Source: Raja brachyura (lineage: Eukaryota). Taken from it: 64,000 bases of DNA. The position numbers and the translations under genes were made by a program. Position 1 is the first letter of the stretch. The number at the start of each line of letters is the position of its first letter. Below, piece by piece: positions 1-55,762 of the stretch. The stretch spans positions 73,904,001 to 73,968,000 of the forward strand of contig OY740784.1 of the NCBI GenBank assembly GCA_963514005.1, read 5' to 3'. The notes beneath the pieces are model-generated. The model was not told the DNA's origin and searched no databases. It saw nothing but the letters and a program-made list of their open reading frames with translations.

Positions 1-199
1 GGAATATGTGACGTTTCTGGTCGAGATTCTTAATCAGATTGAGAGTCAGGGAGGGGGGAAACTAGAAGTATTGTATTAGGTAGAGAACAAAGGAGATTCT
101 GTATCGATGACTCAGGAAAGGTGGAGTCAACAATGGTTCATTGTTGGCAGGGGACGAAGGGATAACGAAGGAATCCAAATTATGAAATTAGCAAGAGGA

Positions 200-390
200 T
201 CAGGGTTGGAGAGGGAGGGAATGCAAGGGTTACTTGAAGTTAGGAAAATAGATAGGCTGGGTTGTAAGCTGCCCAAGTGAAATATGAGGTGCTGTTGCTC
301 CAATTTGTGTGTGACTCTGACAGTGGAGGAGACTCATGGCAGAAAAGTCAGTATGGGAGTGGGAAAGAGAGTTGAAATGTTTGGCAACTG
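200..390 (-). mobile_element. Degenerate Penelope-like element 3' region, interrupted at 390 by the hAT insertion
   Basis: Resembles 37290-37455 and 54850-55010 (gcccaagtgaaatatgaggtgctg...gagttgaa). The minus translation has a PAVAKHFNSLSHS-like GIY-YIG C-terminal remnant. The sequence resumes briefly after 5237. Confidence 0.75.
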
Positions 391-726
391 CAGGGCTATC
401 AACTCTCACGCTTTGAGCGTGAGAATCACGCATTTTAACAAATTATCACGCCTTCACGCTGATCAGAAATTTCTCACGTTCTGTGGTGAGAAATTCTGTG
501 ATCAATGAAAATTTCAAAACTTAGATAAACTGCATGGTTTGCAGGTGTTGGAGAGCCGGGGCTGAGGGAGGGATGGAAGCACAAGCAGCAGCGGAGACCG
601 ATGTGGACGGGGATCCGGGGTTGGTGAGTGTTTGCCGGGGCTGGTGAGTGTTTGGCGGGGCTGGCGAGTGTGGCGGGGCTGGCGACTGTTTGCGGGGCTG
701 GCGAGTTGCTCGCTGCAGCTCCGGCC

Positions 727-795
727 ATGGAGCAGTGCAAGAGTCCTGGGCCGTCGGAAGCGTTGTGCCGCTGCCGTGAGAGTCTCCGTGCCGAA
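727..795 (+). pseudogene. Truncated first copy of TDP2-like exon 1 (MEQCKSPGPSEALCRCRESLRAE)
   Basis: GCCATGG start context. Paralogous to 1816-1890 and broken off by the GA tract. Confidence 0.55.
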
Positions 796-796
796 G

Positions 797-1571
797 GGAC
801 AGAGACTCTCAAAGGGAGGCGGAGAGAGAGGGGGGAAGGAGACAGGGAGATGGGGGGGGGGGGGGGGGAGAGAGAGAGAGGGGAGAGACGGAGAGTGGGG
901 AGAGAGAAGAGTGAGAGGGAGAGGGTGGGAGAGAGGAGTAGGGAGAGAGGGGGAGGGTGAGGTGAGAGAGGGGTGGGAAGAGAGAGGGGTGAGAGGGAAG
1001 AAAAAGGGAAGAGAGAGGGTGGAGAGGGAGGAGTGGGTAGGAGAGAATGGGAGAGAGAGAGAGGGGTGGTAAAAGAGAGGGGAGAGAGGGGGAAGAGAGA
1101 AAGGGGCGAAAGAGAGATGGGGGCAAAGAGAAAGAGGAGATAGAGACGGGAGAAAGAGAGAGGGGAGAGAGAGCAAGGGGAAGAGTGAGGTGGGAGGGAG
1201 AAATTGGGGAGAGAGAGGGGGAGAGAGAGATGAGAGAGTGGGGAGAGGAGTTTGTGGAGAGGGAGCGAGGGGGTAAGAAAGAGAGAGGGAGAGGGAGGGG
1301 GGGAAGCGAGGGTGAGGAGAAAGAGACGGGGAGAGAGAAGAAAGAGGGGAGGGAGAGAGAGGAGAGGGACGGGAAGAGAAAGGAGAGGGAAGGGGAGAGA
1401 GGGGGGTGAGAGGAGAGAGAGCGAGATACACAGAGGGGGAGGGGAGAGATAGAGGGGGGAGGGGAAGAGAGAGAGAGAGAAGGGAGAGAGAGAGGGAGGA
1501 GAGTGAGGTGGGAGGGAGAGAGAGGGGAGAGAAAGAGAGGTGGAGAGAGAAGAGAGAGGGGGATAGAGAGG
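797..1571. repeat. Polypurine (GA-rich) low-complexity tract
   Basis: About 775 bp of almost pure G/A. It accounts for the Pro/Ser/Leu and Arg/Glu/Gly junk ORFs. Confidence 0.95.
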
Positions 1572-1890
1572 CAGGGCTGCCAACTCCCATGCATTGAGCG
1601 TGAGAATCATGCATTTCGCCAAATTCTCACACTGATCACAAATGTTGCATGCTCTGTCGTGAGAAATTCTGTGATCAACAAAAATTTGAAAACTCATATT
1701 AACTGCATGGGCCATGGGTGTTGGAAGCAGAAGCAGCAACAGGGACAGATGCGGACGGGGAGCGGGGCTGGCGAGTGTTTGTCGGGCTGGCGAGTCGCTC
1801 ACTGCAGCTCCGGCCATGGAGCAGCCTCAGTGCTCAGTGCAAGGCGTCAGAAGCGTTGCGCCGCTGCCATGAGAGTCTCTGTGCCAAATT
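1572..1890 (+). repeat. Internal duplicate of the transposon left end (copy of ~391-795)
   Basis: Starts CAGGGCTGCCAAC, the exact reverse complement of the right TIR, and runs colinear with 391-795. Confidence 0.9.
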
Positions 1891-1960
1891 CGCCCAGGTG
1901 ACCAGCATGGATCAGGCTGCGGCTCGGTGCATCCTGGAGGACAACCAGTGGCTGCTGGAA
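1816..1960 (+). pseudogene. TDP2: TDP2-like exon 1 fragment (UBA-like domain N-terminal part), frameshifted relative to its ATG
   Basis: Encodes LCAKFAQVTSMDQAAARCILEDNQWLLE, matching recalled human TDP2 LCVEFASVASCDAAVAQCFLAENDWEME. Followed by a phase-0 consensus donor GAA|GTAAGT at 1960/1961. No downstream TDP2 exons were recognised. Confidence 0.72.
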
Positions 1961-2069
1961 GTAAGTACCAAGCACTGGGTAGAAACGGTGGAAGATAGTG
2001 GACTTCAAATGGGGCTGGTTGGAGAATGCATCCTGCTTGCCTGCTCGATTTTCACTTACTGTAACTGCA

Positions 2070-2410
2070 GGAAAAATGTTCCCGATGTTGGGGGAGTTCA
2101 GAACTAGGGGTCACAGTTTAAGAATAAAGTGGGGGGGGGCAGTTAGAACTGAGATGAGGACAAACTTTCTTCACGCAGAGAGTTGTGAATCTGTGGAATT
2201 CTCTGCCACAGAAGGCACTACAGACCAATTCACTGGACGTTTTCAAGAGAGAGTTACATTTAGTTCTTGGGGCTAATGAAATCAAGGGATATGGGGTAAA
2301 AATAGGAAAGAGGTACTGATTTTAGATGAATAGCCATGATCATATTGAATGGCAGTGCTGGCTCGAAGGGCTGATGGCCTATTCCTGCACCTATTTTCTA
2401 TGTTTCTATG
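2070..2410 (+). mobile_element. CR1 LINE 3' fragment inside the hAT element
   Basis: MFPMLGEFRTRGHSLRIK motif and a ttctatg tail. Confidence 0.85.
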
Positions 2411-4603
2411 CTTGAGCATATGGCAATAAAACTCGATTTTGAAGCATTCATGCATGGTGGAGGTATAATGTAGTCACAGATTGATACAGTGTGAAAACAG
2501 GCCCTTCGGCGCAACTTGCCCACACCCGCCAACATGTCCCAGCTACGCTACCTGCTTTTGGTCCATACCTCCAAACCTGTCCTATCCGTGTATCAGTCTA
2601 ACTGTTTCTTAAATGTTGGGATGGTCCCTGCCTCAACTACCTCATCTGGCAGCTTGCTCCATACACCCACCACCCTTTGTGTGGATAAAGTTACCCCTTA
2701 AAAAGTTACCTCTTAAAAATACTTCATACAAAAAACATTGAAATCATACTTCTACAATGCACTAAAACATGATTTTAATACATCAAATTTCAAAAGGTTC
2801 TTACCCTGGGAGGGGGGAACACCCTTCTTCCACACCCTCTCCCCACTCGGTTGCTCCAGTCCCTCACCGGGTACCCCTAAGGCCAGTGATCAGTGATCGC
2901 TCAGCCTCCCCACTTTCGAAAATGCTCCGCGGCCCCTGGTTCAGACGGAGAACACTGCCAGATGTGAGCGGGGAACTGAGGCCAGTTGTCCGTGATGTCT
3001 GGATCCCAATGCTCAGCGCTTCATGTTTCGGAGTTGGCTAATGTTATTGATTTGTAATTAGTTGACAAAACCGTAATTTATTAATCCGGAATATCCTTGG
3101 GGATGGGATAAATGTAATATTAAATGACATGCAAGGTGTCAGGCTGTCTGTCACAACATACAACCCTGATAATACATTATTTCCTTCAGTTAAATATTGG
3201 GAAGGTAGCACTATTGTCATTTGCCACTAAATTATTATGTTTGTTTACCTCACTAACTATTTCTAACCCCCCCCCCCCCCCCAATTCCTTTGACAAGTTG
3301 AATAGAAATGCCCCCAATCTCGTTGTTTTATTAATTGAACATGTAGATGAACATGCTCAAGGAGTGTAATCATATGGAAACTGATTCAGATGCAATATTT
3401 AAGAGCTTGTTCATAGAAAGGGCATATTTTAAAGGAGTGACAGATACCTGCAGGGGAATGTGTGAGGAGATTATTATTTGTCTTTAGTTTTTGCTTGAAC
3501 CAGGACATCTGCAGATTCAAAGTTTAATATAGTAATTGTGCTGATACTGACCCCCAAGCAACCACGTAATGAATATCATCCATTCTGGAGGTTTTACTTT
3601 TATGATGCCATTTAAACTTCACTTGGATTTCAATCACTGCAATGTAAAAGTGATTGGGAATGGGGAGCATTGGAACAAACATTTGCCCTTGGTACATATT
3701 AACTGTAATGTAATAATGTATGCATGTTGGTAGGTGCAATCAAAACAAAAATATTTTTTATCATTGTTGTGTTATGAATACCACAGAAAATATTATGTAC
3801 TTTCAAGATCACAGTTAATAGAATAATATTGCTTAAATATATAGTTATTGGACTTTGCATTTCGGAAAAGTCCCAGCTGAGAGGAAGAAAGCAAAATACT
3901 GAAAATATTGGGGGTGAAAATGACTTCAGGACAGTTTGTTACGAAAATGAAAGAAATTGTATCAGAATACTTATACAGTTGAGTGAGATTAATTTCATGG
4001 ATGGGAATTGTGTTCAACCAACTTCTTTGACAAAGTAACTGGCATGTTAGATAACAAGGAAGCCAATGAATGTAGCAAATTTTCTTATCCATAATTTGGT
4101 CTGTGAAGTGCCCCATAAAGGATTACTGCATTAGATAAGCACCTGTGGACTTGAACGTAATAGGTTAAGTCCAGGGGGTCAGATATGGGGCTTTATGTGT
4201 GGGCCAGATATATTGTCAGTGCAAAGGGGCTAGGAGCAAGGTCAAGTTTGCATCCAGAATCAAGGTCTAGAATAGTACTAGGTGTGCAGTCAAAGCTGGG
4301 ACCAAGGGTGTGTTCAGCACTGGGAACCTAAGCAGGTAAGCAGCTATGATCAGGGTAGAATAGGGGGCCAGGTGTAAGGCTGGACTCGGGGTCAGGAATG
4401 AGAGACGGTATGCAACTGGAGTCAGGGCCAGGAGTAGTACCAGGTGTGCAGTGAGACCCAGGTTGGTCAACATGGGCCAAATGCTTGATTATAATCTGAT
4501 TTCCATTAATGAATACACTAAGATCATTCATGTGCTGTACCTGGTGATCAGATCCTGGGCTCTACTGTGGAATGTAATTAGGAATGTAATTTACTCTAAC
4601 CTT

Positions 4604-5154
4604 AAGGGCCTGTCCCATCAGCATGCGACTCCATGCGGTGAGCGCGACCTAACGTGGTCGCATGACGCGTCCGGTCTCGCGGGGCAGGTCCCACTTCGAT
4701 CACCGTGTGTAGTTGTGCGGAGCTGTTCCCGACACCGCGCGGGGCTCCGAAAAACTGACCGTGTTCAAAAATTCCGCGCGGCAACGGCTTGTCGGCTCGC
4801 AGCCGCCGCAACGCATTACGCACCGCCTCGACGTCGTGCCTCCATGACCCTCTCTATATGTGCCTCTGTTACCCTCTGTGTGTGTGCCTCCGTGACCCTC
4901 TCTGTGTGCCTCCGTGTCCCTCTCTGTGTGTCCCTCTCTGTCCTTGCGAAATTACCGCGGACATCGCTCCAACTTTGCGCCGCGTCGCACCACTCACCCG
5001 ACCTCCGCGCGGCCCCCGCTGCCGGTTTGGTCGCGCTCGCCGCATGCTGGTGGGACCGGTCCTGTACGGGGATCACCCGACCTCCGCGCGGCCCCTGCTT
5101 CCAGTTTGGTTGCGCTCACCGCATGGAGTCGCATGCTGATGGGACAGGCCCTTT
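4604..5154. mobile_element. PIF/Harbinger-like MITE nested in the hAT element
   Basis: TIRs AGGGCCTGTCCCA...TGGGACAGGCCCT with TTA/TAA flanks. A homologous copy lies inverted at 19776-20355. Confidence 0.8.
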
Positions 5155-5802
5155 ATTCATTGCTACTCTCCCTCAGGTTTGGTCTCGCAATTTCTCACTT
5201 CCAACTCTCACCCAATGTTGGCAGCCCTGGGCAACTGGGAGATAGTTACTAAGGTCCTTCACACTCAAGATTATTTCTCTACTTCCTTCTTTTCTTGCTT
5301 ATCATGCTTATCATGTTTTTGGCTGATCAGTTACTATTTTCTGGTGTGTTTTTGTCAAATGTGGTTAATTTTCTAGGGAAGTGCATGTTACTATGTTCTG
5401 TTGTGCTGCAACAAACAAGAATGCTATTGTCCCATCTGGGACACATGACAATAAACTCTCTTGACTTGAAGTGCCTGGAGTGTTGTTCTATTTTAAAGTT
5501 GCTCTCTAGCATAGTTATTATCAAGCTTATAATTGTAAAAGAGTACTGTTCTGTGGGGACACATTATTTACTGGGATAAATGCCAGGGGGCGGAAGAAGA
5601 GAACAGTTTATTTCTCTTTTACTATATGATAATTTGTAATTGCAGATTTCCACCAATAAGTTGTACACTTTTACATTCATTCAAGTCTAGTTAGTTTTAT
5701 TAAATTGTTTTAACTCTGCACTCCTGAGCTCTTACCTTTATGTTCTTTCGTAGCTTGTGGTGATGCTGAATCTGTTGATGATTGGCGCCAGGCCCTTGCA
5801 GG

Positions 5803-6027
5803 ATGAGCAAATTGCCGACTGGCCCGGAAAATGCTGGAGTCAATTCCTTTGGTCACAGTGCCTCCATCAGTACTATGCAATCCATCACCGCAGCCCAAGT
5901 TGCAGCTAGGTTAGACTCGTATAAACCAATTGGTAAAAGAAATATTTCTGATGTCAGGAGGACTTTCTGTTTATTTGTTACGTTTGATCTACTATTTGTT
6001 GGTTTGTTGTGGATAATCGAATTGAAT
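5803..6027 (+). CDS. STARD3NL: STARD3NL (MENTHO) coding exon 1
   Basis: MSKLP...ISDVRRTFCLFVTFDLLFVGLLWIIELN, the MENTAL domain start. Acceptor TTTCGTAG ends at 5753, ATG at 5803, donor GTAAGT at 6028. 225 coding nt. Confidence 0.95.
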
Positions 6028-7173
6028 GTAAGTACTAAACTTTTTATTGATTTGCATTCTGATGAACGGGTTTTAATAATTCTGTTGTTTATTGAAACGA
6101 CCTTGTGGATATAATTGTGGGGTTAAGTAACAGCTGAGAGAAGGAGTCGGTAGGAGGCTTGGCTTGTGGCGAAAGCATAGAGGGCAGGATCTCACCAAAA
6201 ATGGATGGAGAGTAGTTATACACAAGCTTTCCTTCGGAACAGATGGGATCAAGGCCTACAGTTTCTGGTTATGTTTTATGCCTTTGTCAGGAATGCTCAT
6301 TTTATATTTCATATGTCAGCAATGATTTGGTCAGAAAGTTTCTTATTGCAAAATCAGATATTACAATCAGGTCATGTTTTTATTCATCTAATGACGGTAA
6401 CTTTTTTGGGAAGTCACAGTAAACTATAGATAACTTCTGTATTTATAAGCTTTGTGTTGATATTTCTCCCCCTGTTCCCTTTTCTATCCTGGTTCCGCAC
6501 CATTAGCATCCTTGCTCTTTGTCGAGAAAGAGTTGTAAACCAAATTATGTGCAAATTCTTCTGCTGGTCTGTGCCTGACGACTTTAGCAGTTTTATCTCT
6601 TTTTCTCCTGACAGTAAATTCTGTTTTCCCTATTATTTTCAGCCAGCAACTTTATTTCAGTAGTTAGTTGACCAGAATTGCACAACATGATTTTTTGTGG
6701 ATCTGATTTATTTTATTTTGTAATATTCTGGGAACCTTTGCTTTCAATTTTGCAGTTGAGCCGATCTCCTACTTTCATTTTTTTTAACTGGGTGGCACAG
6801 TGACGCAGTGGTAGACTTGCCGCGTAACCGCGCCAGAGACCCAAGTTCAATCCTATGACTGTGAGTTTTCCCCGTGGTGCGAAACTATATGGGGGGGGGG
6901 GGGGGGGGGGGGAGGAGGACCTCAATAAGCCAATCACAAATAAAGATCATATCATACATTTATTGACAGTCCCTAACCCAGTCACAAAGTACCCCATTAC
7001 ATAGTTTCCACAGAAGACAGTTCACCAAAGTAAAGAAACATTTCCCAGGTAATATAAACAATTTGAACAAGGCTCATACATTGACCAATCATAAGATAAC
7101 AGCACAAACACTCTGCAGCATAATTAACAATGCTTTACAACACCCCAATCTATAACCAATCCATTTGCAACCC

Positions 7174-14446: not shown

Positions 14447-17400
14447 CATAGAAACATAGAAAATAGGTGCAGGAGTAGGCCATTTGGCCCTTCGAGCCTG
14501 CACCGTCATTCAATATGATCATGGCTGATCATCCAACTCGGTATCCTGTACCTTCCTTCTCTCCATACCCCCTGATCCCTTTAGCCACAAGGGTCACATC
14601 TAACTCCCTCTTAAATATAACCAATGAACTGGCCTCAACTACCTTCTGTGGCAGAGAATTCCAGAGACTCACCACTCTATGTGTGTAAAATGTTTTCCTC
14701 ATCTCAGTCCTAAAGGAATTCCCCCTTATTCTTAGACTGTGACCCCTTGTTCTGGACCTCCCCAACATCGGGAACAATCTTCCTGCATCTAGCCTATCCA
14801 ACCCCTTAAGAATTTTGTAAGTTTCTATAAGATCCCCCCTCAGTCTTCTAAATTCTAGTGAGTACAAGCCAAGTCTATCCAGTCTTTCCTCATATGAAAG
14901 TCCTGACGTCCCAGGAATCAGTCTGGTGAATCTTCTCTCTACCCCCTCTATTGCAAGAATGTATTTTCTCAGATTTGGAGACCAAAACTTTACGCAATAC
15001 TCCAGGTGTGGTCTCTGCAAAACCCTGTACCACTGCAGTAGAACCCCCCTGCTCCTATACTCAAGTCCTTTTGCTATGAATGCTAACATACCATTTGCTT
15101 TCTTCATTGCCTGCTGCACCTGCATGCCTACTTTCAATGATTGGTGTACCATGCACCAAGGTTGCACCTACGCTTTTCCTAATTTGCCACCATTCAGGTA
15201 ATAGTCTACCCTCCTGTTTTTGCCACCAAAGTGGATAACCTCACATTTATCCACATTATACTGCATCTGCCATGCATTTGCCAACTCACCCAGCCTATCC
15301 AAGTCACCCTGCAGCCTCCTATCATACTCCTCACACCTAACACTACCCCGCAGCTTAGTGTCATCTGCAACTTGGAGATGTTGCATTCAATTCCCTCGTC
15401 CAAATCATTAATATATATTGTAAATAGCTGGGGTCCCAGCACTGAGCCTTGCGGTACCCCACTAGTCACTGCCTGCTATTCTGAAAAGGACCCGTTCACT
15501 CCTACCCTTTGCTTCCTGTCTGCCAGCCAGTTCTCTATCCACATCAATACTGAACCACCAATACCGTGTGCTTTAAGTTTGTATACTGATCTCTTATGTG
15601 GGACCTTGTCGAAAGCCTTCTGAAAGTCTAGAAATAACACATCCACTGGTTCTCCCTTATCCACTCTACTAGTTACATCCTCGAAAAATTCTATAAGATT
15701 CGTTAGACATGATTTACCTTTCGTAAATCCATGCTGACTTTGTCTAATGATTTCACCACTTTCCAAATGTACTGCTATCCCATCTTTAATAACTGACTCT
15801 AGCAGTTTCCCCACTACCGATGTTAGACTAACTGGTCTGTAATTCCCCGTTTTCTCTCTCCCTCCTTTTTTAAAAAGTGAGGTTACATTAGCTACCCTCC
15901 AATTCTCAGGAACTACTCCAGAATCTAAGGAGTTATGAAAAATTATCACTAATGCATCCACTATTTCTGTGGCTACTTCCTTGAGTACTCTGGGATGCAG
16001 ACTATTTGGCCCTGGGGATTTATCGGCCTTTAATCCATTCAATTTACCCAACACCTCTTCCGGGCTAACCTGGATTTCACTCGGTTCCTCCACCTTATTT
16101 GACCCCCAGTCCCCTGTTATTTCCGGCAGATTATTTATGTCTTCCTTAGTGAAGACCGAACCAAAGTAGTCATTCAATTGGTCTGCCATGTCCTTGTTCC
16201 CCATGATCAATTCACCTGTTTCTGACTGCAAGGGACCGACATTTGTTTTAACTAATCTCTTTCTCTTCACAGATCTATAAGAACTTTTGCAGTCAGTTTT
16301 TATGTTCCCTGCCAGTTTTCTTTCATAATCTATTTTCCCTTTCCTAATTGAGCACTTTGTCCTCCTCTGCTGGACTCAGAATTTCTCCCAGTTCTCTGGT
16401 TGGCTGCTTTTTCTGGCTAATTTGTATGCTTTATCTTTTGTTTTTATACTATCCCTGATTTCCCTTGTTATCCATGGATGCACTACCTTCCCTGATTTAT
16501 TCTTTTGCCAAACTGGGATGACCAATTTTTGTAGTTCACCGATGCAGTCTTTAAATACCTTCCATTGCACATCCACTGTCAACCCTTTAAGAATCACTTG
16601 TCAGTCTATCTTGGCCAATTCACGTCTCATACCTTCAAAGTTACCTTTGTTTAAGTTCAGAACCCTTGTTTCTGACTTAATTATGTCACTCTCCATCCTA
16701 ATGAAGAACTCAACCATATTATGGTCACTCTTGCCCAACGGGCCACGCACAACAAGACTACTAACTAACCCTTCCTCATTACTCAATACCCAGTCTAGAA
16801 TAGCCTGCTCTCTCGTTGGTTCCTCAACATGTTGGTTTAGAAAATTATCCCGCTTACATTCCAAGAAATCCTCTTCCTCAGCACACCTGCCCATTTGATT
16901 CACACAATCTATATGTAGATTGAAGTCACCCATTATAACTGTTTTACCCATGTTGCACGCATTTCTAATTTCCTGTTTGATGCCATCCCCAACTCCACTA
17001 CTACTGTTAGGTGGCCTGTACACAACTCCCACTAGCGTTTTCTGCCCCTTAGAGTTTTGCAGCTCTACCCATATCGATTCCACATCCTCCAAGCTAATGT
17101 CCTTTCTTTCTATTGCATTAATCTCCTCTCTCACCAGCAACACTACCCCACTTCCCTCTCCTTTCTGTCTATCCCTCCTGAATATTGAATATCCCTGGAT
17201 GTTCAGCTCCCAGCCTTGGTCCCCTTGGAGCCACGTTCCATGATCCCAACTATAGGATAGTCATTAATAGCTATCTGCACATTCAACTCGTCCACCTTAT
17301 TACAAATGCTCCTTGCATTGAGACACAAAGCCTTCAGACTTGTTTTTACAACACTCTTACTCCTTAAAAAATTATGTTGACAAGTGGTCCCTTTTGATTT

Positions 17401-19775: not shown

Positions 19776-20355
19776 TAAGGGCCTGTCCCACCAGCATGCA
19801 ACTCTATGCGATAAACGCGATCAAACTAGAAGCGGGGGCCGCGCGGAGGTCGGGTGATCCCCTGTACAGGGCCGTTCCCACCAGCATGCGCCTGCATGCG
19901 GCAAGCGCAACCAAACCGGCAGTAGGGGCCGCGCGGAGGTTGGGTGAGTGGCGCAACACGGCGCAAAGTGAGGCGAACCTGGAGCGAAGTCTAAGTTAAG
20001 TTCGCCAGGACAGAGAGGGGGCACCGAGGCACACACACACACAGGGCCACGGAGCCACACACATAGAGAGTCACAGAGGCACCTACAGATAGGTTCACGG
20101 AGGCACGATGTCGGGGCGGTGTGTAAACGTCGAGGCGACTGCGAGCCGGCAAGCCGTTGCCGCGCAGAATCTTTGGACATAGTCAGTTTTTCGGAGCCCC
20201 GCATGGTGTCGGGACGAACTTGGGACGAACTCCGCACAATTCCGCAAGGCTCTGGCGATCGAAGTGGGACCGGCCCCGCGACGCCTGACGGCTCAAGCGA
20301 CCACGTTAGGTCGCACTAATCGCATAGAGTTGCATGCTGGTGGGACAGGCCCTTT
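19776..20355. mobile_element. PIF/Harbinger-like MITE
   Basis: TIRs AGGGCCTGTCCCACCAGCATGC / GCATGCTGGTGGGACAGGCCCT with TTA/TAA flanks. Confidence 0.82.
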
Positions 20356-20359
20356 AGTT

Positions 20360-22641
20360 TATAGAAACATAGAAATTAGGTGCAGGAGTAGGCCATTCGG
20401 CCCTTCGAGCCTGCACCGCCATTCAATATGATCATGGCTGATCATCCAACTCAGTATCCCATACCTGCCTTCTCTCCATACCCTCTGATCCCCTTAGCCA
20501 CAAGGGCCACATCTAACTCCCTCTTAAATATGGCCAATGAACTGGCCTCAACTACCCTCTGTGGCAGAGAGTTCCAGAGACCCACCACTCTCTGTGTGAA
20601 AAATGTCCTTCTCAACTCGGTCCTAAAGGATTTCCCCCTTATCCTTAAGCTGTGACCCCTTGTCCTGGACCACCCCAACATCGGGAACAATCTTCCTGCA
20701 TGTAGCCTGTCCAACCCCTTAAGAATTTTGTAAGTTTCTATAAGATCCCCTCTCAATCTCCTAAATTCTAGAGAGTATAAACTGAGTCTATGCAGTCTTT
20801 GTTCATAAGACAGTCCTAACATCCCAGGAATCAGTCTGGTGAACCTTCTCTGCACTCCCTCTATGGCAATAATGTCCTTCCTCAGATTTGGAGACCAGAA
20901 CTGTACGCAATACTCCAGGTGTGGCCTCACCAAGACCCTATACAACTGAAGTAGAACCTCCCTGCTCCTATACTCAAATCCTTTTGCTATGAAAGCTAAC
21001 ATACCATTCGCTTTCTTCACTGCCTGCTGTACCTGCATGCCTACTTTCAATGACTGGTGTACCATGACACCCAGGTCACGCTGCATCTCCCCTTTTCCTA
21101 ATCGGCCTCCATTTAGATAATAGTCTGTTTTCCTATTTTTGCCACCAAAGTGGATAACCTCACATTTATCCACATTATACTGCATCTGCCAAACATTTGC
21201 TCACTCACACAGCCTATCCAAGTCACCTTGCAGTCTCCTAGCATCCTCCTTACAGCTAACACTGCCCCCCAGCTTAGTGTCATCCGCAAACTTTGAGATA
21301 TTGCCTTCAATTCCCTCATCCAGATCATTAATGTATATTGTAAATAGCTGGGGTTCCAGCACTGAGCCTTGCGGTACCCCACTAGTCACTGCCTGCCATT
21401 GTGAAAACGGCCCGTTTACTCCTACTCTTTGCTTCCTGTTTGCCAGCCAGTTCTCTATCCACATCAATACTGAACCCCTAATGCCGTATGCTTTAAGTTT
21501 ATATACTAATCTCTTATGTGGGACCTTGTCGAAAGCCTTCTGGAAGTCCAGATACACCACATCCACTGGTTCTCCCCTATCCACGTTACTAGTTACATCC
21601 TCGAAAAATTCCTCAAGATCCACAACCTTTCGTAAATCCATGCTGACTTTGTCCAATGATTTCACCACTTTCCAAACGTGCTGCTATCCCATCTTTAATA
21701 ACTGACTCTAGCAGTTTCCCCACTACCGATGTTAGACTAACTGGTCTGTAATTCCCCGTTTTCTCTCTCCCCCCTTCTTAAAAAGAGGGGTTACGTTTGC
21801 TACCCGCCAATCCTCAGGAACTACTCCAGAATCTAAAGAGTTTTGAAAGATTATCACTAATGCATCCACTATTTCCGGAGCTACTTCCTTAAGTACTCTG
21901 GGATGCAGCCTATCTGGCCCTGGGGATATATCGGCCTTTAATCCATTCAATTTACCCAACACCACTTCCCGACTAACCTGGATTTCACTCAAGTACTCCT
22001 TTGACCCACGGTCCCCTGCTATTTCCGGCAGATTATTTATGTCTTCCTTAGTGAAGACGGAACCAAAGTAGTTATTCAATTGGTCCGCCATATCCTTGTT
22101 CCCCATGATCAACTCGCCTGTTTCTGACTACAAGGGACCTACATTTGTTTTAACTAATCTCTTTCTCTTCACATATCTATAAAAACTTTTGCAGTCAGTT
22201 TTTATGTTCCCTGCCAGTTTTCTTTCATAATCTATTTTTCCTTTCCTAATCAAGCCCTTTGTCCTTCTCTGCTGGTCTCTGAATTTCTCCCAGTCCTCTG
22301 GTATGCTGCTTTTTCTGGCTACTTTGTACGCATCATTCTTTGCTTTGATACTATCCCTGATTTCCCTTGTTATCCACGGATGCACTACCTTCCCTGATCT
22401 ATTCTTTTGCCAAACTGGGATGAACAATTTTTGTAGTTCATCCATGCAGTCTTTAAATGTCTTTCATTGCGTATCCACCGTCAACCCTTTTAGAATTGAT
22501 TGGCAGTCAATCTTGGCCAATTCACGTCTCATACCCTCAGAGTTACCTTTCCTTAAGTTCAGAACCATTGTTTCTGAATTAACAATGTCACTCTCCATCC
22601 TAATGAAGAACTCAACCATATTATGGTCACTCTTGCCCAAG
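20360..22641 (-). mobile_element. Young CR1 LINE, 5'-truncated
   Basis: Long RT and C-terminal ORFs (20451-22445), near-identical to 41853-42920. Confidence 0.95.
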
Positions 22642-31522: not shown

Positions 31523-32012
31523 ATAGAATCATAGAAAATAGGTGCAGGAGTAGGCCATTCGGCCCTTAGAGCCTGCACCACCATTCAATATGATCATCCA
31601 ACTCGGTATCCTGTACCTGCCTTCTCTCCATACCCCCTGATCCCTTTAGCCACAAGGGCCACATCTAGCTCCCTCTTAAATGTAGCCAATGAACTGGCCT
31701 CAACTACCTTCTGTGGCAGAGAATTCCACAGACTCACCACTCTCTGTGTGAAAAAAGATCTTCTCGTCTCGGTCCTAACAGACTTCCCCCTTATCCTTAA
31801 ACTGTGACCCCCTTGTTCTGGAGTTCCCCAACATCGGGAACAATCTTCCTGCATCTAGCCTGTCCAACCCCTTAAGAATTTTGTCAGCCTCTATAATATC
31901 CCCCCTCAATCTCCTAAATTCCAGCGAGTACAAGCCACGTCTATCCAGTCTTTCTTCATACGGAAGTCCTGCCATCCCAGGAATCAGTCTGGTGAGCCTT
32001 CTCTGTACTCCC
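31523..32012 (-). mobile_element. CR1 LINE 3' fragment
   Basis: VQRRLTRLIPGMAGLPYEERL motif and CR1 tail. Confidence 0.9.
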
Positions 32013-36953: not shown

Positions 36954-38426
36954 GGGGGTTACACAAAAAGCTGGAGAAACTCAGCGGGTGCAGCAGCATC
37001 TAAGGAGCGAAGGAGATAGGCGACGTTTCGGGTCGAGACCCTTCTTCAGACTGGTCAGGGATCAGGGAAACGAGAGATATAAACAGTGATGTGGAGAGAT
37101 AAGGAACAATGAGTGAAAGATATGCAAAAAAGTATTGGTGACAAAGGAAGCAGGCCATTGTAAGCTGTTTGTGGTGTGAAAATGAGAAGCTAGTGCGACT
37201 GGGGAGGGGGGGGGGGGGGAGATGGAGAAGGAATGTCAGGGCCAGAGGGCTGAGGGAGAGGTGGGGGGGAGGCAGTCTGGGTTAACAGAATTGAGAAAAT
37301 TCAATGTTTAAGCCCAGAGGATGCAGACTCCCCAAGCGGAATATGAGGTGCTGTTCCTCCAACTTGCGGTGTTGATCACTCTGGCCGTGGAGGAGGCCCA
37401 GGACCGAGAGGTCGGATACGCAGTGGGAGGGGGAGTTGAAGTGCTGAGCCACCGGGAGGTCGGGTTGGTTATTGCGGACCGAGCGGAGGTGTTCGGCGAA
37501 ACGATCGCCCAGCCTCCGCTTGGTCTCACCGATGTAGATCAGCTGGCATCTGGAGCAACGGATGCAGTAGATGAGGTTGGAGGAGGTGCAGGTGAACCTC
37601 TGTCGGACTTGGAATGACTGCTTGGGTCCCTGAAAGGAGTGGATGGGGGAGGTGAAGGGACAAGTGTAGCATCTCTTGCGGTTGCAAGGGAAAGTGCCCG
37701 GGGAGGGAGTGGAGCGGGAGGGAAGGGAAGAATTGACGAGGGAGTTGCGGAGGGAGCGGTCTTTGCGGAAGGCAGACAGGGGGGGAGATGGGAAGATGTG
37801 GCGAGTGGAGGGGTCACGTTGGAGGTGACGAAACTGGCGGAGGACTATCTGTTGTATGCGCTGGCTGGTGGGGTGAAAGGTGAGGACCAGGGGGACTCTG
37901 CCCTTGTTGTGAGTGGGGGAATGGGGAGAGAGGGCAGTGTCGCGGGGTATGGAGGAGACCCTGGTGCGAGCCTCATCTATAGTGGGGGAGGGGAAACCCC
38001 GTTCTCTGAAGAACGAGGACATTTGCGATGACCTGGTGTGGTACACGTCATCCTGGGAGCAGATGCGGCGTAGACGGAGGAATTGGGAATAGGGGATGGA
38101 GTCCTTACAGGAAGCAGGGTGGGAGGAAGAGTAGTCCAGGTAGCTGTGGGAGTCAGTTGGTTTGTAGTGGATGTCAGTCAGGAGTGTATCACCTGCAATA
38201 GAGATGGTGAGGTCAAGGAATGGTAGGGAAATGTCGGAAATGGTCCAAGTATATTTGAGTGCCGGATGGAAGTTGGTGGTGAAATGGATGAAGTCAGTCA
38301 GTTCTGCGTGGGTGCAGGAGGTGCGCCTATCTCCTTCGCTCCTTAGATGCTGCTGCACCCGCTGAGTTTCTCCAGCTTTTTGTGTAACCCTCGATTCTCC
38401 AGCATCTGCAGTTCCTTCTTTAACAA
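36954..38426 (-). mobile_element. Young 5'-truncated Penelope-like retroelement with inverted pseudo-LTR
   Basis: Open frame 37282-38322 covering the RT C-terminus and a GIY-YIG nuclease (NLIYCIRCSRCQLIYIGETKRRLGDRFAEH). Inverted repeat between ~36956-37022 and ~38324-38390. 14-bp TSD CTCATCTAAATCTC at 36940-36953 and 38427-38440. Confidence 0.93.
37022..37051 (-). ncRNA. Minimal hammerhead ribozyme motif in Penelope pLTR
   Basis: Minus strand reads GU-CUGAAGA-A-GGGUC-UC-GACCC-GAAA-CG-UC: both catalytic boxes, helix II, a minimal helix III and a GUC cleavage triplet. Confidence 0.7.
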
Positions 38427-41690: not shown

Positions 41691-41852
41691 TGTCAACATT
41701 GGAATAGAGTTTTAGAGTGGTATTTGGTTAGAGTCATAGAGTGATACAGTGTGGAAACAGGCACTCCGGTCAACTAGCCGACGCCGGTCAACATGTCCCA
41801 GCTACACTAGTCCCACCTGCCTGCACTTGGTCCATTTCCCTCCAAACCTGTC

Positions 41853-42917
41853 ATAGAAACATAGAAATTAGGTGCAGGAGTAGGCCATTCGGCCCTTCCA
41901 GCCTGCACCGCCATTCAATATGATCATGGCTGATCATCCAACTCAGTATCCCGTACCTGCCTTCTCTCCATACCCTCTGATCCCCTTAGCCACAAGGGCC
42001 ACATCTAACTCCCTCTTAAATATAGCCAATGAACTGGCCTCAACTACCCTCTGTGGCAGAGAGTTCCAGAGACCCACCACTCTCTGTGTGAAAAAATTCC
42101 TTCTCATCTCGGTCCTAAAGGATTTCCCCCTTATCCTTAAGCTGTGACCCCTTGTCCTGGACCTCCCCAACATCGGGAACAATCTTCCTGCATCTAGCCT
42201 GTCCAACCCCTTAAGAATTTTGTAAGTTTCTATAAGATCCCCTTTCAATCTCCTAAATTCTAGAGAGTATAAACCGAGTCTATGCAGTCTTTGTTCATAA
42301 GACAGTCCTGACATCCCAGGAATCAGTCTGGTGAACCTTCTCTGCACTCCCTCTATGGCAATAATGTCCTTCCTCAGATTTGGAGACCAGAACTGTACGC
42401 AATACTCCAGGTGTGGCCTCACCAAGACCCTATACAACTGAAGTAGAACCTCCCTGCTCCTATACTCAAATCCTTTTGCTATGAAAGCTAACATACCATT
42501 CGCTTTCTTCACTGCCTGCTGTACCTGCATGCCTGCTTTCAATGACTGGTGTACCATGACACCCAGGTCGCGCTGCATCTCCCCTTTTCCTAATCGGCCT
42601 CCATTTAGATAATAGTCTGTTTTCCTATTTTTGCCACCAAAGTGGATAACCTCACATTTATCCACATTATACTGCATCTGCCAAACATTTGCCCACTCAC
42701 CCAGCCTATCCAAGTCACCTTGCAGTCTCCTAGCATCCTCCTCACAGCTAACACTGCCCCACAGCTTAGTGTCATCCGCAAACTTGGAGATATTGCCTTC
42801 AATCCCCTCATCCAGATCATTTATGTATATTGTAAATAGCTGGGGTCCCAGCACTGAGCCTTGCGGTACCCCACTAGTCACTGCCTGCCATTGTGAAAAC
42901 GACCCGTTTACTCCTAC
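41853..42917 (-). mobile_element. Young CR1 LINE 3' fragment inserted in an older CR1
   Basis: Intact 312-aa RT C-terminal ORF (41943-42881), with CTGTC on both sides. Confidence 0.95.
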
Positions 42918-52361: not shown

Positions 52362-53843
52362 AACGAACGTCGACAGTGGTTATGTTTGAAGCTGGTGTTA
52401 AATCGTTCGGGTGTGATCTCTACAACAGATGTTGGATCTGAAAACCTGCGGAAGACCACCGCCGCCAAAAAGCTGAACTACACCTCGCTATCCCGGCCAC
52501 TTAGCACCAACACGTAGCGTGCCCTTCCAACGACAGGGCCGTTATCAAAAACACAGCCTCGTGCAACTCAGCGGCCAGAAATACTATCCAACCAGCAGCT
52601 ACACAACCAGCTTTTGCAGATATTCTGAATCAATAAACTACAGATAACTATAACCACCTGTTAACTGAAAACAGTTAACTTTTTAATTCGAAGAAGCATC
52701 CTCAATTTGTAACATTAACCCTGTTTCTCTTTCCACAGTAACTGTTTGACATTCTGAATGCTACTGAGTTTTCTATTTTTAATTTCCTGCATCGTATTTT
52801 TAATGTTTGTGGCGGAGATGATCGCGGGCCACTCTCGTTAACCTCTTCTCGAGCAGAGTCTGATGAAGGGTCCCGACCCGAAGCGTCACCTATTCCTTTT
52901 CTTCAGAGATGCTACCTGACCCGCTGAGTTACTCCAACACTTTGTGTCTATCTTTTCCAGCAAACCTGGCTTCGTACAAGATTCACAATAAATGACGGGG
53001 ACACGCCGCAGGGATGCATCTCTCAGTGGCACCGAATATACAACATCACCGGCCTCTCATGAAAGGAGCCGTGTGTTATAAATGTAAGCGAGAGGCACGC
53101 TACTGAATGGGCAATAGACAATAGGTACAGGCGTAGTCCTTTCGGCCCTTCGAGCTAGCACCGCCATTCACTGTGATCACGACTGATCATCCACAATCAG
53201 TACCCAGTTCCTGCCTTCTCCCGATAGCCCTCGACTCCGCTATCTTTAAGAGATCTATTAAACTCTCTATTGAAAGCATCCAGAGAATTTGCCTCCACTG
53301 CCTTCTGAGGCGAATTTCACAGATTCGCAACTCTCTGGGTGAAAACGTGCTTCCTCATCTCCGTTCTAAATGGCCTACCCCTTAGTCCACTTGACTGGTC
53401 AGAGTCGTGTACTCCCTCGGAGTTTGGTAGATGTATAAGGTATCTATTTTTTTTCTATCCCTTTCGCACCGCCAAATTTCCAGCGAGGAGATTAAAATTG
53501 ATGGAGGTAAAATTGGTGTCAGTCAGTCTGGACCATGCCCCCGAGTCCCTTCCCGCCCCAAATCATTGCTTCAATATAGCACCCGGGAACCGATTTACAA
53601 GTCTGCGGACGGGAGCACGGAGTTTTTTCTTTGGAAAGCTAGCACCCAACCCATTGCTGCAAGCCCTCCCGCACTCTTTGTTCTTCATGCCCTCCCCCCC
53701 CCCCCCCCCCCCACGTACCCTCTGCTGCCAACCCCCCCCCCCCCCCCCCCCCCCCAACCCTCTCCCACCCTCCTTCCAACCTTTCCCTACAGTTCGCGAA
53801 GAGTTGCTACCCCTGCTCCTGGATGCCCCCACTCCAGACGTAC

Positions 53844-54649: not shown

Positions 54650-55205
54650 GTAGACGAAAATGCTGGAGAAACTCAGCGGGTGCAGCAGCATCTATGGAGC
54701 GAAGGAAATAGGCAACATTTCGGGCCAAAACCCTTCTTCAGACTGACGTGAGGGTGAAGGGGGGCGGGGGGGTGTAAAGAAGAAAGGAAGAGGAGGAGCC
54801 AGAGGGCTGAGGGAGAGCTGAGAAGGGGAGGAGACAGATGGGACTACCTGAAATTAGTTCATACTGCTGGGGTGTAAACTGCCCAAGTGAAATATGAGGT
54901 CCTGCTCCTCCAATTTACGGTGGTCCTCAATCTGGCCGCAGAGGAGGCCCAGGACAGAAAGGTCGGATTCGGAATGGGAGGGGGATTTGAAGTGCTGAGC
55001 CACCGGGGGATCAGGTTGGCCATTATGAACCGAGCAGAGGTGTTCAGCGAAGCGATCGCCAAACCTACGCTTGGTCTCACCGACGTAGATCAGCTGACAT
55101 CTAGAGCAGCGGATGCAATAGATGAGGTTTGAGGAGGTGCAGGTAAACCTCTGTCGCACCTGGAAAGACTGCTTAAGTCCTTGAATGGAGTCAAGAGGGG
55201 AGGGG
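54650..55205 (-). mobile_element. Penelope-like 3' fragment (GIY-YIG + pLTR) between J segments
   Basis: NLIYCIRCSRCQLIYVGETKRRFGDRFAEH. Homologous to 37282-37650. Confidence 0.9.
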
Positions 55206-55762
55206 TGTCTTATTGTCTTGGTCGTGGTATGAAAGAGCTTAGAGCAGTACCTTATGCCCTCCGTGTCTACACAATCCACCGAGCACTCCTTTATTCTAAA
55301 TCCCACATCAATCCCATTTGTTCGACTCACATTCCCACCAATTCCCCCCAGATTCTCTCATTCATCTCACAGTCGGAGCAATTTCTGCAGTGGCCTATTA
55401 CCCAACCAACCCGCACGTCTTTGGGGTGTGGGAGAAAAGCGGAGCGCCCATCAGAAATCACGCGGTCATAGGGAGAACGTGACAACTCCACACAGTCAGC
55501 AGTGGAGGTCGGGTTTATTAAACTGGTCCATTGGAATATGGAGGCAGCAGCTCTATAACCTTACATAAAACTCCACGCAACCATTATTTGAAGGAGCAGC
55601 AATGGGCGTCTCCTACAAATCTCCTATCAATATCTATCCCTGAAACACGTGACAAAGAAAGAATGAATGGTCCTCACCATGATCCAGGCTGCAGTTTCTA
55701 CATCACAAGTGCTTAGGAAAATGTTCAAGAGAGGATCGGGATGCAGGTTGAATCACGTGTAC

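What the first reader, a model, noticed from the sequence alone, without database searches (positions are those of the whole stretch)
383..5237. 4.8-kb gene-capturing hAT transposon carrying a TDP2-like first exon
Seen in the sequence: 13-bp TIRs, a perfect 8-bp TSD (GGCAACTG), insertion into a Penelope remnant that continues on the far side, and no transposase. The cargo is a GC-rich 5'UTR-like stretch, a Kozak ATG, a UBA-like coding segment, a consensus donor and about 3 kb of intron-like DNA with nested repeats. Established: 8-bp TSDs and CAGGG termini are typical of hAT elements, and TIR elements can capture gene fragments (Pack-MULE/Pack-TIR). Inference: the whole unit moved as one Pack-hAT and duplicated the 5' end of TDP2, a DNA-repair gene, into the STARD3NL locus.
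Basis: partly seen in the sequence, partly recalled or inferred. Interest (0 to 1): 0.85.

Follow-up and report, generated by a model that had tools for sequence, protein, structure and literature searches.

The report
High-copy hAT element with TDP2-like exon
This stretch is a genuine transposon insertion, but it is one worn, rearranged copy of a repeat family with roughly thousands of copies whose members all carry a TDP2-like exon piece, so it is not a fresh copy of the TDP2 gene's start placed at this locus.

Summary
The 8-bp duplication GGCAACTG flanks 391-5229. The ends are CAGGG-type inverted repeats, matching at 11 of 13 positions. Removing the insert and one duplication copy restores the reading frame of a Penelope-like (GIY-YIG) remnant on the minus strand.

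The peptide at 1847-1960 is UBA-like. Its only significant solved relative is the TDP2 UBA domain (E 1e-4 alone, 1.3e-5 as a profile). It ends at a GTAAGT donor.

The interpretation needs correcting in three ways:
- **Doubled 5' end.** The 5' TIR, subterminal motifs, GC-rich repeats, ATG and exon start occur twice (391-797 and 1572-1890, 82% identical), split by a 770-bp GA-rich array. The inner TIR matches the 3' TIR at 13 of 13.
- **Broken exon.** In the complete inner copy the ATG is out of frame with the UBA segment.
- **High copy number.** Contigs from four public runs cover the interior, including the exon and the intron-like DNA, at about 2,400-13,000 times single-copy depth in the three runs with a single-copy reference, with dozens of variants per site. 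Three database ORFs come from other copies.

So this is a high-copy non-autonomous hAT family carrying the exon module family-wide. Any capture was ancestral, and the parent gene was not found. Earlier scan notes mention "TDP2 first exons" on two other pieces of this genome. Interest is modest.

The parts
383..390 (.). Left copy of the 8-bp target-site duplication GGCAACTG
   Evidence: On the minus strand it encodes the PVA of the Penelope-like frame.
391..797 (+). Copy A, a 5' fragment of the family. It holds the outer TIR CAGGGCTATCAAC (391-403), TCTCAC(G) subterminal motifs, 4.8 copies of a 20-bp GC-rich tandem repeat (615-706), an ATG at 727, and the first 23 or so codons of the exon module in frame. 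It is cut off at 797.
   Evidence: It is 82% identical to 1572-1890 and has CpG o/e 0.89.
798..1571 (+). GA-rich low-complexity array separating the two 5' ends
   Evidence: GC skew about +0.9; TRF period-2 and longer arrays.
1572..5229 (+). Copy B, a complete non-autonomous element. Its 5' TIR CAGGGCTGCCAAC (1572-1584) is 13 of 13 complementary to the 3' TIR (5217-5229).
   Evidence: Its interior is covered at roughly thousands of times single-copy depth in four runs.
1816..1960 (+). Exon-like module. The ATG at 1816 has a good Kozak context, but its frame closes after 18 codons. The UBA-like segment (helices 1-2) is 1847-1960 in the +1 frame relative to the ATG.
   Evidence: The TDP2 UBA (6q00) scores E 1e-4 and 1.3e-5. 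A sister copy carries PF14555 UBA_4.
1961..1966 (+). GTAAGT splice-donor consensus directly after codon GAA (phase 0). Similarity to TDP2 ends here.
2066..2410 (+). SINE-like repeat inside the element. It is extremely abundant and has seven or more further copies in the window. Contigs of other family copies cross the 2065/2066 junction, so it was already present before the family amplified.
   Evidence: and table 8 (records 2, 9, 10).
2472..2700 (+). Second short interspersed repeat inside the element
2701..4590 (+). It is repeated at about the same level as the 5' end. Deletion variants that skip about 3061-3920 occur in other copies.
   Evidence: tables 2 and 5. No credible ORF. CpG o/e 0.26.
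4605..5152 (.). Nested MITE with 50-nt TIRs (96% complementary) flanked by TTA/TTA. It is specific to this copy.
   Evidence: (I1). A second copy lies at 19777-20367. An X15 contig of another family copy departs at 4604 (record 23).
5154..5229 (+). 3' subterminal region with TCTCAC motifs (5193, 5206) and the 3' TIR (5217-5229)
5230..5237 (.). Right copy of the target-site duplication GGCAACTG
1..382 (-). Penelope-like element remnant, left part: the C-terminal end of the GIY-YIG endonuclease region (...KHFNSLSHSHTDFSAMSLLHCQS...)
   Evidence: The paralog 37285-37848(-) gives a weak GIY-YIG hit, TIGR01453 at E 0.045.
5238..5300 (-). Penelope-like remnant, far side (...RKEGSREIILSVKDLSNYLP), continuing the same frame
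5754..6027 (+). Context: first coding exon of a STARD3NL-like gene. An AG acceptor sits at 5752-5753, the ATG at 5803 and a GTAAGT donor at 6028. It has the same orientation as the element and lies 525 bp downstream of it.
   Evidence: The identity rests on my memory of the human STARD3NL motif ISDVRRTFCLFVTFDLLFV.LLWIIELN. The tool checks were blank.

Best explanation
The interval 391-5229 is one insertion of a non-autonomous DNA transposon of the hAT superfamily. The family has of the order of thousands of copies in this genome and in relatives.

The family unit, best seen in 1572-5229, consists of:
- a 13-bp TIR, CAGGGCTGCCAAC;
- subterminal TCTCAC(G)/GTGAGA motifs, the likely transposase-binding sites;
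- a GC-rich 20-bp tandem repeat;
- an exon-like module: an ATG, then about 50 codons whose last 30 resemble helices 1-2 of the TDP2 UBA domain, closed by GTAAGT;
- about 2.5 kb of non-coding interior that already contained a SINE;
- the 3' end.

The element has no transposase. It must have been moved in trans by a hAT transposase through cut-and-paste, with a staggered 8-bp target cut that gave the GGCAACTG duplication (inferred from hAT biology).

The UBA-like module is family-level sequence. The likeliest origin is a single capture of the 5' end (exon 1 plus the start of intron 1) of TDP2 or a close relative by the family's founder. That event was followed by amplification and neutral decay.

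This particular copy is composite and dead:
- an extra truncated 5' end plus a GA-rich array precedes the complete unit;
- the exon is frameshifted;
- a MITE is nested near the 3' end.

The composite arose in one of two ways. Either the outer 5' end and the distal 3' end were used together (macrotransposition), or gap repair with template switching occurred at the site. This is inferred and unresolved.
For: - **Insertion is real.** The TSD and TIRs are. The paralogous empty site restores the Penelope-like frame only with exactly one TSD copy (blastp E 1e-9 and 1e-6).
- **Family level: depth.** Summed contig depth across 401-800 and 1601-4600 is about 2,400-6,000 times the single-copy flank in X1 (97) and X2 (7.8). 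It is about 8,000-13,000 times in X10 (39.8), whose flank is about 4% diverged.
- **Family level: variants and subfamilies.** In those three runs, about 30-100 distinct contigs lie at most sampled sites inside the element, against 1 in the flank. Deletion subfamilies are visible.
- **Two diverged 5' ends.** They have the same TIR-to-ATG layout inside the element.
- **Other copies.** P0001, P0002 and P0003 are ORFs of other copies, 75-84% identical, read through the same donor.
- **UBA and TDP2.** 6q00 (TDP2 UBA) is the only PDB hit below E = 0.1: E 1e-4 for the single sequence and 1.3e-5 for the profile. P0002 carries PF14555 UBA_4. The Atlas neighbours are UBA_4.
- **Neutral decay.** The frameshift is. 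Between P0001 and P0002 the exon differs by 20%, against 25-28% in the translated flanks.
- **No transposase.**
Against: - No autonomous partner and no transposase were seen. The superfamily call rests on TSD length, the terminal motif and subterminal repeats only. The TSD does not fit the weak nTnnnnAn preference.
- The parental gene was not found. Among 1.84 billion representatives only another TE copy scored, so derivation from TDP2 rests on 30 residues at 40% identity.
- Depth ratios from summed contigs are rough, and the tool itself warns that they are not copy numbers.
- Colinearity of the whole 3.7-kb unit in other copies is inferred from even depth and a few junction-spanning contigs, not from a full-length second copy.
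Confidence: 0.72

Rival explanations
1. Deletion derivative of an autonomous hAT element, analogous to Ds from Ac. On this reading the GC-rich leader, ATG, UBA-like exon and donor are the 5' UTR, first coding exon and first intron of the family's own transposase gene, and the rest of the gene has been deleted. The resemblance to TDP2 would then reflect an old domain acquisition by the transposase, or convergence.
For: - The module sits about 245 bp from the 5' TIR in every copy seen, where a transposase gene would start.
- It has a Kozak ATG and a phase-0 consensus donor.
- Internal deletion variants exist in the family (joints 3061-3920).
Against: - The profile-free scan of 1.84 billion representatives found no long protein carrying this exon, only a 110-aa TE read-through ORF.
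- No transposase remnant lies in the interior.
- To my knowledge hAT transposases start with BED or similar zinc fingers, not UBA-like domains.
- The exon evolves no more slowly than its flanks between copies.
Confidence: 0.17
2. One reading: a single, recent Pack-hAT event in which a 4.8-kb unit captured exon 1 and about 3 kb of intron 1 of TDP2 and carried them into the STARD3NL locus as a unique duplicate.
For: The TSD, the TIRs, the TDP2-like peptide and the donor are all present.
Against: - The exon and the 'intron' are covered at about 2,400-13,000 times single-copy depth, with dozens of sequence variants in three organisms' runs.
- The 5' TIR and exon start are already duplicated and 18% diverged within the element.
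- Independent copies exist in protein databases.
- Other scan notes report 'TDP2 first exons' on other pieces of this genome (unchecked leads).
Confidence: 0.05
3. The UBA-like module was captured from a UBA_4-family gene other than TDP2, such as a UBX, FAF, DCN1-type or lineage-specific gene. TDP2 is then merely the nearest solved structure.
For: - Only 30 residues align, at 40% identity.
- The Atlas neighbours are generic UBA_4 clusters.
- No TDP2 representative passed the threshold.
Against: - At E up to 10, no other UBA-type chain in the PDB appeared.
- The matching residues (LC.FA.V...D.A.A.C.L..N.W.E) are spread over both helices.
Confidence: 0.06

Closest known systems
Pack-TIR elements of animals (Tan et al. 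2021, Nat Commun, PMC8277862), e.g. Pack-hAT-N8_XT carrying a CAPSL 5' UTR fragment in Xenopus tropicalis
   Same: A non-autonomous hAT with TIRs and 8-bp TSDs that carries a fragment from the 5' end of a host gene and no transposase. Exon-containing fragments are over-represented among such captures.
   Different: - In that survey only 4 of 370 Pack-TIRs were multicopy, and the example had three copies. Here the carrier family is of the order of thousands of copies.
- The capture here is old and no parental locus is identified. It would therefore not meet that study's definition, which needs an identifiable parent.
Ds-type deletion derivatives of Ac (maize hAT) and double or composite Ds structures
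   Same: Short CAGGG-type TIRs, 8-bp TSDs, subterminal repeated motifs, internal deletions, and composite elements with an extra end that can arise by aberrant transposition or gap repair.
   Different: No autonomous partner is known here. The retained exon resembles a host DNA-repair gene rather than a transposase. This is an animal (cartilaginous-fish-like) genome.
TDP2 N-terminal UBA domain (PDB 6q00/6q01)
   Same: Residues ESLCAKFAQVTSMDQAAARCILEDNQWLLE align without gaps to RLLCVEFASVASCDAAVAQCFLAENDWEME.
   Different: Only two of the three UBA helices are encoded. No further TDP2 exon follows. The copy here is frameshifted. The module is a dispersed repeat, not the gene.
hAT-Charlie-type MITEs of vertebrates (TIRs of the CAGGGGT..CAAAC type; recalled from memory, not tested)
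   Same: Terminal sequence CAGGGCTGCCAACTC, 8-bp TSD, high copy number, no coding capacity.
   Different: This unit is much longer (about 2.5 kb without nested repeats) and has an exon-like module. The subgroup assignment is untested.

Membership tests
hAT superfamily DNA transposon | 8-bp target-site duplication | tested here: met
   GGCAACTG lies on both sides. Exactly one copy restores the interrupted Penelope-like frame.
hAT superfamily DNA transposon | Short TIRs (about 10-25 bp) beginning with YARNG | tested here: met
   CAGGGCT(A/G)(T/C)CAAC. The outer pair matches at 11 of 13 and the inner 5' end matches the 3' end at 13 of 13.
hAT superfamily DNA transposon | Transposase with an RNase-H-like core and a hAT dimerisation domain, in the element or in an autonomous partner | tested here: not met
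   No credible ORF lies in 391-5229, so the element is non-autonomous. No partner could be searched for, because no eukaryotic genome or Pfam scan was available.
hAT superfamily DNA transposon | Weak target preference nTnnnnAn | tested here: not met
   Neither GGCAACTG nor its complement CAGTTGCC has T at position 2 and A at position 7. This is a weak preference, not a requirement.
hAT superfamily DNA transposon | Repeated subterminal motifs at both ends | tested here: met
   TCTCAC occurs at 404, 472, 1625, 5193 and 5206. GTGAGA occurs at 419, 486, 1600 and 1659.
Pack-TIR (gene-fragment-carrying non-autonomous TIR element) | Internal sequence derived from a host gene with an identifiable parental locus | tested here: inconclusive
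   The similarity is to the TDP2 UBA at protein level only (E 1e-4 and 1.3e-5).
Pack-TIR (gene-fragment-carrying non-autonomous TIR element) | TIRs and TSD enclose the fragment; no transposase | tested here: met
TDP2 gene (true exon 1) | Single-copy exon followed by the remaining TDP2 exons (EEP phosphodiesterase domain) | tested here: not met
   The exon is covered at about 3,500-13,000 times single-copy depth. It is frameshifted. No further TDP2-like ORF follows, and the next exon downstream is STARD3NL-like.
UBA-like domain (Pfam PF14555 UBA_4) | Sequence match to the family model or a solved member | tested here: met
   The sister copy P0002 carries PF14555. The TDP2 UBA is the best PDB hit. 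The Atlas neighbours are UBA_4 at scores of 0.87-0.89, which counts as a lead only. Only helices 1-2 are encoded.
Penelope-like element (flanking remnant) | C-terminal GIY-YIG endonuclease domain following the RT | tested here: inconclusive
   In-window paralogs carry ...LIYIGETKRRLGDRFAEHLRSV.... TIGR01453, a GIY-YIG intron endonuclease model, matches weakly at E 0.045. The RT part was not examined. The architecture is as described in PMC8557442 (abstract).

The most novel reading that the evidence does not exclude
A hAT family has spread a ready-made 'first exon cassette' through the genome in thousands of copies. The cassette has a CpG-rich leader, a Kozak ATG, a UBA-like coding piece and a strong 5' splice donor. 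It would be by far the most amplified exon-carrying Pack-TIR reported in an animal. Some copies may act as alternative promoters or first exons that splice into downstream host exons. Here the donor at 1961 lies in sense orientation 3.8 kb upstream of the acceptor of the first coding exon of STARD3NL. Another scan note reports such an exon in phase with butyrophilin exons.
Probability: 0.12. Interest if true: 0.6.

Novelty: new member of a known kind. Interest (0 to 1): 0.3.

Why it matters
The finding turns an apparent one-off gene capture into a repeat-family feature. Anyone annotating this genome will meet thousands of 'TDP2-like first exons'. These should be masked or treated as transposon sequence, not as TDP2 paralogs or chimeric genes. 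If the module does derive from TDP2, the family is an unusually successful animal Pack-hAT, since multicopy cases were rare in the only broad survey (PMC8277862). It could also be a source of alternative first exons. Beyond that, this is an ordinary, dead transposon copy in the 5' region of STARD3NL.

Tried and rejected
- **Protein-pattern scan of JGI metagenome contigs** for other copies: 94 pattern matches, none related.
- **The search of protein representatives** with the 38-aa peptide: only another TE copy passed. True TDP2s would score below threshold for so short a query, so this says little about the parent.
- **The search for homologous proteins** with P0001: this search sees only proteins of 60-192 aa, so it is blind to full-length TDP2 or transposases.
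- **DNA-level test** that the left-flank repeat continues on the right flank: not significant. The protein-level test succeeded.
- **Empty site in other individuals or species:** contigs break in the repeats flanking the junctions, so no verdict.
- **Rfam and tRNA scans** of 1-6100: nothing.
- **Atlas and PDB checks** of the STARD3NL-like exon: blank.
- **Literature:** no paper links TDP2 to a hAT element. The human TDP2 exon 1 boundary could not be found.
- **CpG asymmetry between copies A and B** (11 versus 5 sites) was considered as an age difference and rejected as not significant.

Full report
**What is in the sequence**

The 8-mer GGCAACTG lies at 383-390 and again at 5230-5237. It occurs only once more in the 64 kb. 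Directly inside these two copies the sequence starts CAGGGCTATCAAC (391) and ends with the reverse complement of CAGGGCTGCCAAC (5229). This is an 11 of 13 inverted repeat of the CAGGG / YARNG kind.

Both ends carry repeated TCTCAC(G)/GTGAGA motifs. No ORF in the interval looks like a transposase. The only long ORFs run through low-complexity or GC-rich repeat DNA.

**The insertion is real**

The left flank (1-382, minus strand) encodes the tail of a GIY-YIG-type endonuclease region typical of Penelope-like elements. Two fuller paralogs lie in the window, at 37285-37848(-) and around 54800-55400(-). One of them gives a weak GIY-YIG model hit.

In a local script I removed 391-5229 and kept exactly one copy of the 8-mer.
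- The minus-strand frame then reads through the junction (...EIILSVKDLSNYLPVA|KHFNSLSHS...).
- One ungapped-frame alignment to the paralogs spans 21 residues of the far side and about 25 of the near side (E 1e-9 and 1e-6).
- With zero or two copies of the 8-mer the frame breaks.

This amounts to a paralogous empty site. The joined flank was used only for that local comparison and was sent to no search tool. A DNA-level version of the test was not significant.

A second 5' terminus lies at 1572, and it matches the 3' TIR at 13 of 13. From it, 1572-1890 aligns with 391-797 at 82% identity. The alignment runs through the subterminal motifs, the GC-rich 20-bp tandem repeat (4.8 units in the first copy, about 2 in the second), the ccggccATGG start and the first codons.

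The first copy ('A') breaks off at 797, inside the exon. A 770-bp GA-rich array follows, up to the second TIR. The interval is therefore a composite: a truncated 5' end, filler, and a complete 3.66-kb unit ('B', 1572-5229). All of it lies between the two TSD copies.

**The exon-like module**

In B, the frame starting at 1847 reads SEALRRCHESLCAKFAQVTSMDQAAARCILEDNQWLLE and is followed at once by GTAAGT.
- Against all PDB chains, the only hit below E = 0.1 is the TDP2 UBA domain (6q00). It scores E 1e-4 with the single sequence and 1.3e-5 with a profile of four copies. The alignment is 30 residues without gaps, and it stops at the donor.
- A sister copy carries Pfam PF14555 (UBA_4).
- The language-model neighbours are UBA_4 clusters, which is a lead only.

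So 'UBA-like, closest to TDP2' holds. The module is not intact, however. ATG 1816 is out of frame with the UBA segment and runs into a stop after 18 codons. In copy A the ATG is in frame, but the exon is truncated.

**It is a high-copy family, exon and 'intron' included**

I laid Logan contigs of four runs on 1-6000.

| Run | Organism | Single-copy flank (5600-6000) | Differences from the window in that flank |
|---|---|---|---|
| X1 | A | one contig, depth 97 | 3 |
| X2 | B | one contig, depth 7.8 | 0 |
| X10 | D | one contig, depth 39.8 | 23 in 592, about 4% |

Inside the element the summed depth is far higher (table 2).
- Bin 1801-2000, which holds the exon: 341,000 in X1, 35,000 in X2 and 533,000 in X10.
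- Bins 2801-4600 are similar: 296,000-572,000 in X1 and 22,000-48,000 in X2.
- This is about 2,400-6,000-fold in X1 and X2, and up to about 13,000-fold in X10.
- In X1, X2 and X10, most sampled sites in the element are covered by about 30-100 distinct contigs, against one in the flank (table 3).
- Deletion variants skipping about 3061-3920 recur in three runs (table 5).

The tool warns that summed depth is not a copy number, so I read this only as 'of the order of thousands'.

Contigs of other copies cross the 2065/2066 junction into the SINE-like segment (table 8, records 2, 9, 10). That SINE was therefore already in the founder. By contrast, a contig of another copy departs at 4604, so the 550-bp MITE (50-nt TIRs, TTA/TTA flanks) is private to this copy.

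Independently, the only protein above threshold among 1.84 billion representatives is a 110-aa ORF of another copy, read through the same donor (84% identical). Two more such ORFs exist.

Between P0001 and P0002 the exon differs at 20% of residues, against 25-28% for the translated flanks on either side. The module is therefore decaying like its surroundings.

Two earlier first-reader notes report 'TDP2 first exons' on other pieces of this genome, and one reports a Pack-type hAT with a BCL7A exon 1. These are unchecked leads that fit the picture. The scan has thus probably met this family before on other DNA.

**How it most likely works**

- **Shown:** a non-autonomous TIR element with an 8-bp TSD inserted into a Penelope-like remnant.
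- **Inferred from hAT biology:** it was mobilised in trans by a hAT transposase that binds the subterminal motifs, excises at the CAGGG ends and integrates at a staggered 8-bp cut.
- **Inferred about the module:** it entered the family once, most simply by capture of the 5' end of TDP2 (leader, exon 1, start of intron 1). It then rode along during amplification without function.
- **Composite structure:** one route is transposition using the outer 5' end and the distal 3' end of two linked copies. The other is double-strand-gap repair with template switching at this site. The data do not decide between them. The CpG asymmetry between A and B (11 versus 5 sites) is not significant.

**Rivals**

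- **Ds-like rival (confidence 0.17).** The module could be the first exon of the family's own transposase gene. This fits its position and signals. However, no long protein with this exon exists in the representative library, no transposase remnant is present, and the exon shows no extra constraint.
This is contradicted.
- **A UBA_4 donor other than TDP2 (0.06).** This cannot be excluded.

**Comparison with what is known**

The nearest described class is the animal Pack-TIR (PMC8277862).
- That survey found 370 cases in 100 genomes, 208 of them hAT.
- Exon-containing fragments were enriched among them.
- Only four cases were multicopy.

The present family works like such an element. It differs in being amplified by orders of magnitude and old, and its parent is unidentified. 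Membership in 'Pack-TIR' therefore remains inconclusive. Membership in hAT rests on structural hallmarks only.

**Context**

A STARD3NL-like first coding exon lies at 5754-6027 on the + strand, with its ATG at 5803. The identity comes from my memory of the human protein, because the tool checks were blank. The element sits in sense orientation 525 bp upstream of it. A splice from 1960 into 5754 is conceivable, but it would be out of frame with the STARD3NL ATG, and none appears among the rows shown.

**Limits**

- No eukaryotic genome search was available.
- Organism names are coded. The cartilaginous-fish impression comes from the repeats and is memory-based.

**Verdict**

This is a real transposon and a real TDP2-like exon piece, but an ordinary, decayed member of a very abundant non-autonomous hAT family. 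It is not a locus-specific duplication of TDP2. Interest 0.3.

Noticed in passing
window 4605-5152 (second copy 19777-20367): A 550-bp GC-rich MITE (CpG o/e 1.12) with 50-nt TIRs that are 96% complementary, flanked by TTA/TTA. This is a Harbinger/Tourist-like TSD. It is nested in the 3' part of the hAT element. It carries internal 24-nt and 79-nt direct repeats.
   Followed up: partly
window 5752-6027: A STARD3NL-like first coding exon (ATG 5803, donor 6028). In run X15, which is small, is labelled 'RNA? (probably DNA)' and which I read as RNA, a 3,121-nt contig of depth 173 begins at 5752, two bases before the exon start. This is what a graph break at a splice junction with alternative upstream exons would give.
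   Followed up: partly
window 798-1571: A 770-bp almost pure purine (GA-rich) strand array inside the composite element, with GC skew about +0.9. Its origin (filler from repair, or a captured microsatellite flank) is unexplained.
   Followed up: no
window 2066-2410 and 14447-14787, 20361-20700, 31523-31853, 41852-42192, 53114-53381, 61532-61876: A very abundant 345-bp SINE-like repeat, with at least seven further copies in the window and millions-fold summed depth in the runs. At 20361-20367 it abuts a copy of the MITE. The same SINE-MITE junction (2408-2410 joined to 4600) recurs in contigs of three runs.
   Followed up: partly
window 37285-37848 (-) and about 54800-55400 (-): Two further Penelope-like remnants with an open GIY-YIG endonuclease region (...NLIYCIRCSRCQLIYIGETKRRLGDRFAEHLRSV...). 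The first has a 188-codon open frame.
   Followed up: partly
window 615-706 versus 1757-1795: The copy number of the 20-bp GC-rich tandem repeat (CCGGGGCTGGCGAGTGTTTG) upstream of the ATG varies between family copies: 4.8 units here against about 2. A 79-nt skip is seen in contigs of other copies. Each change shifts the upstream reading frame.
   Followed up: no
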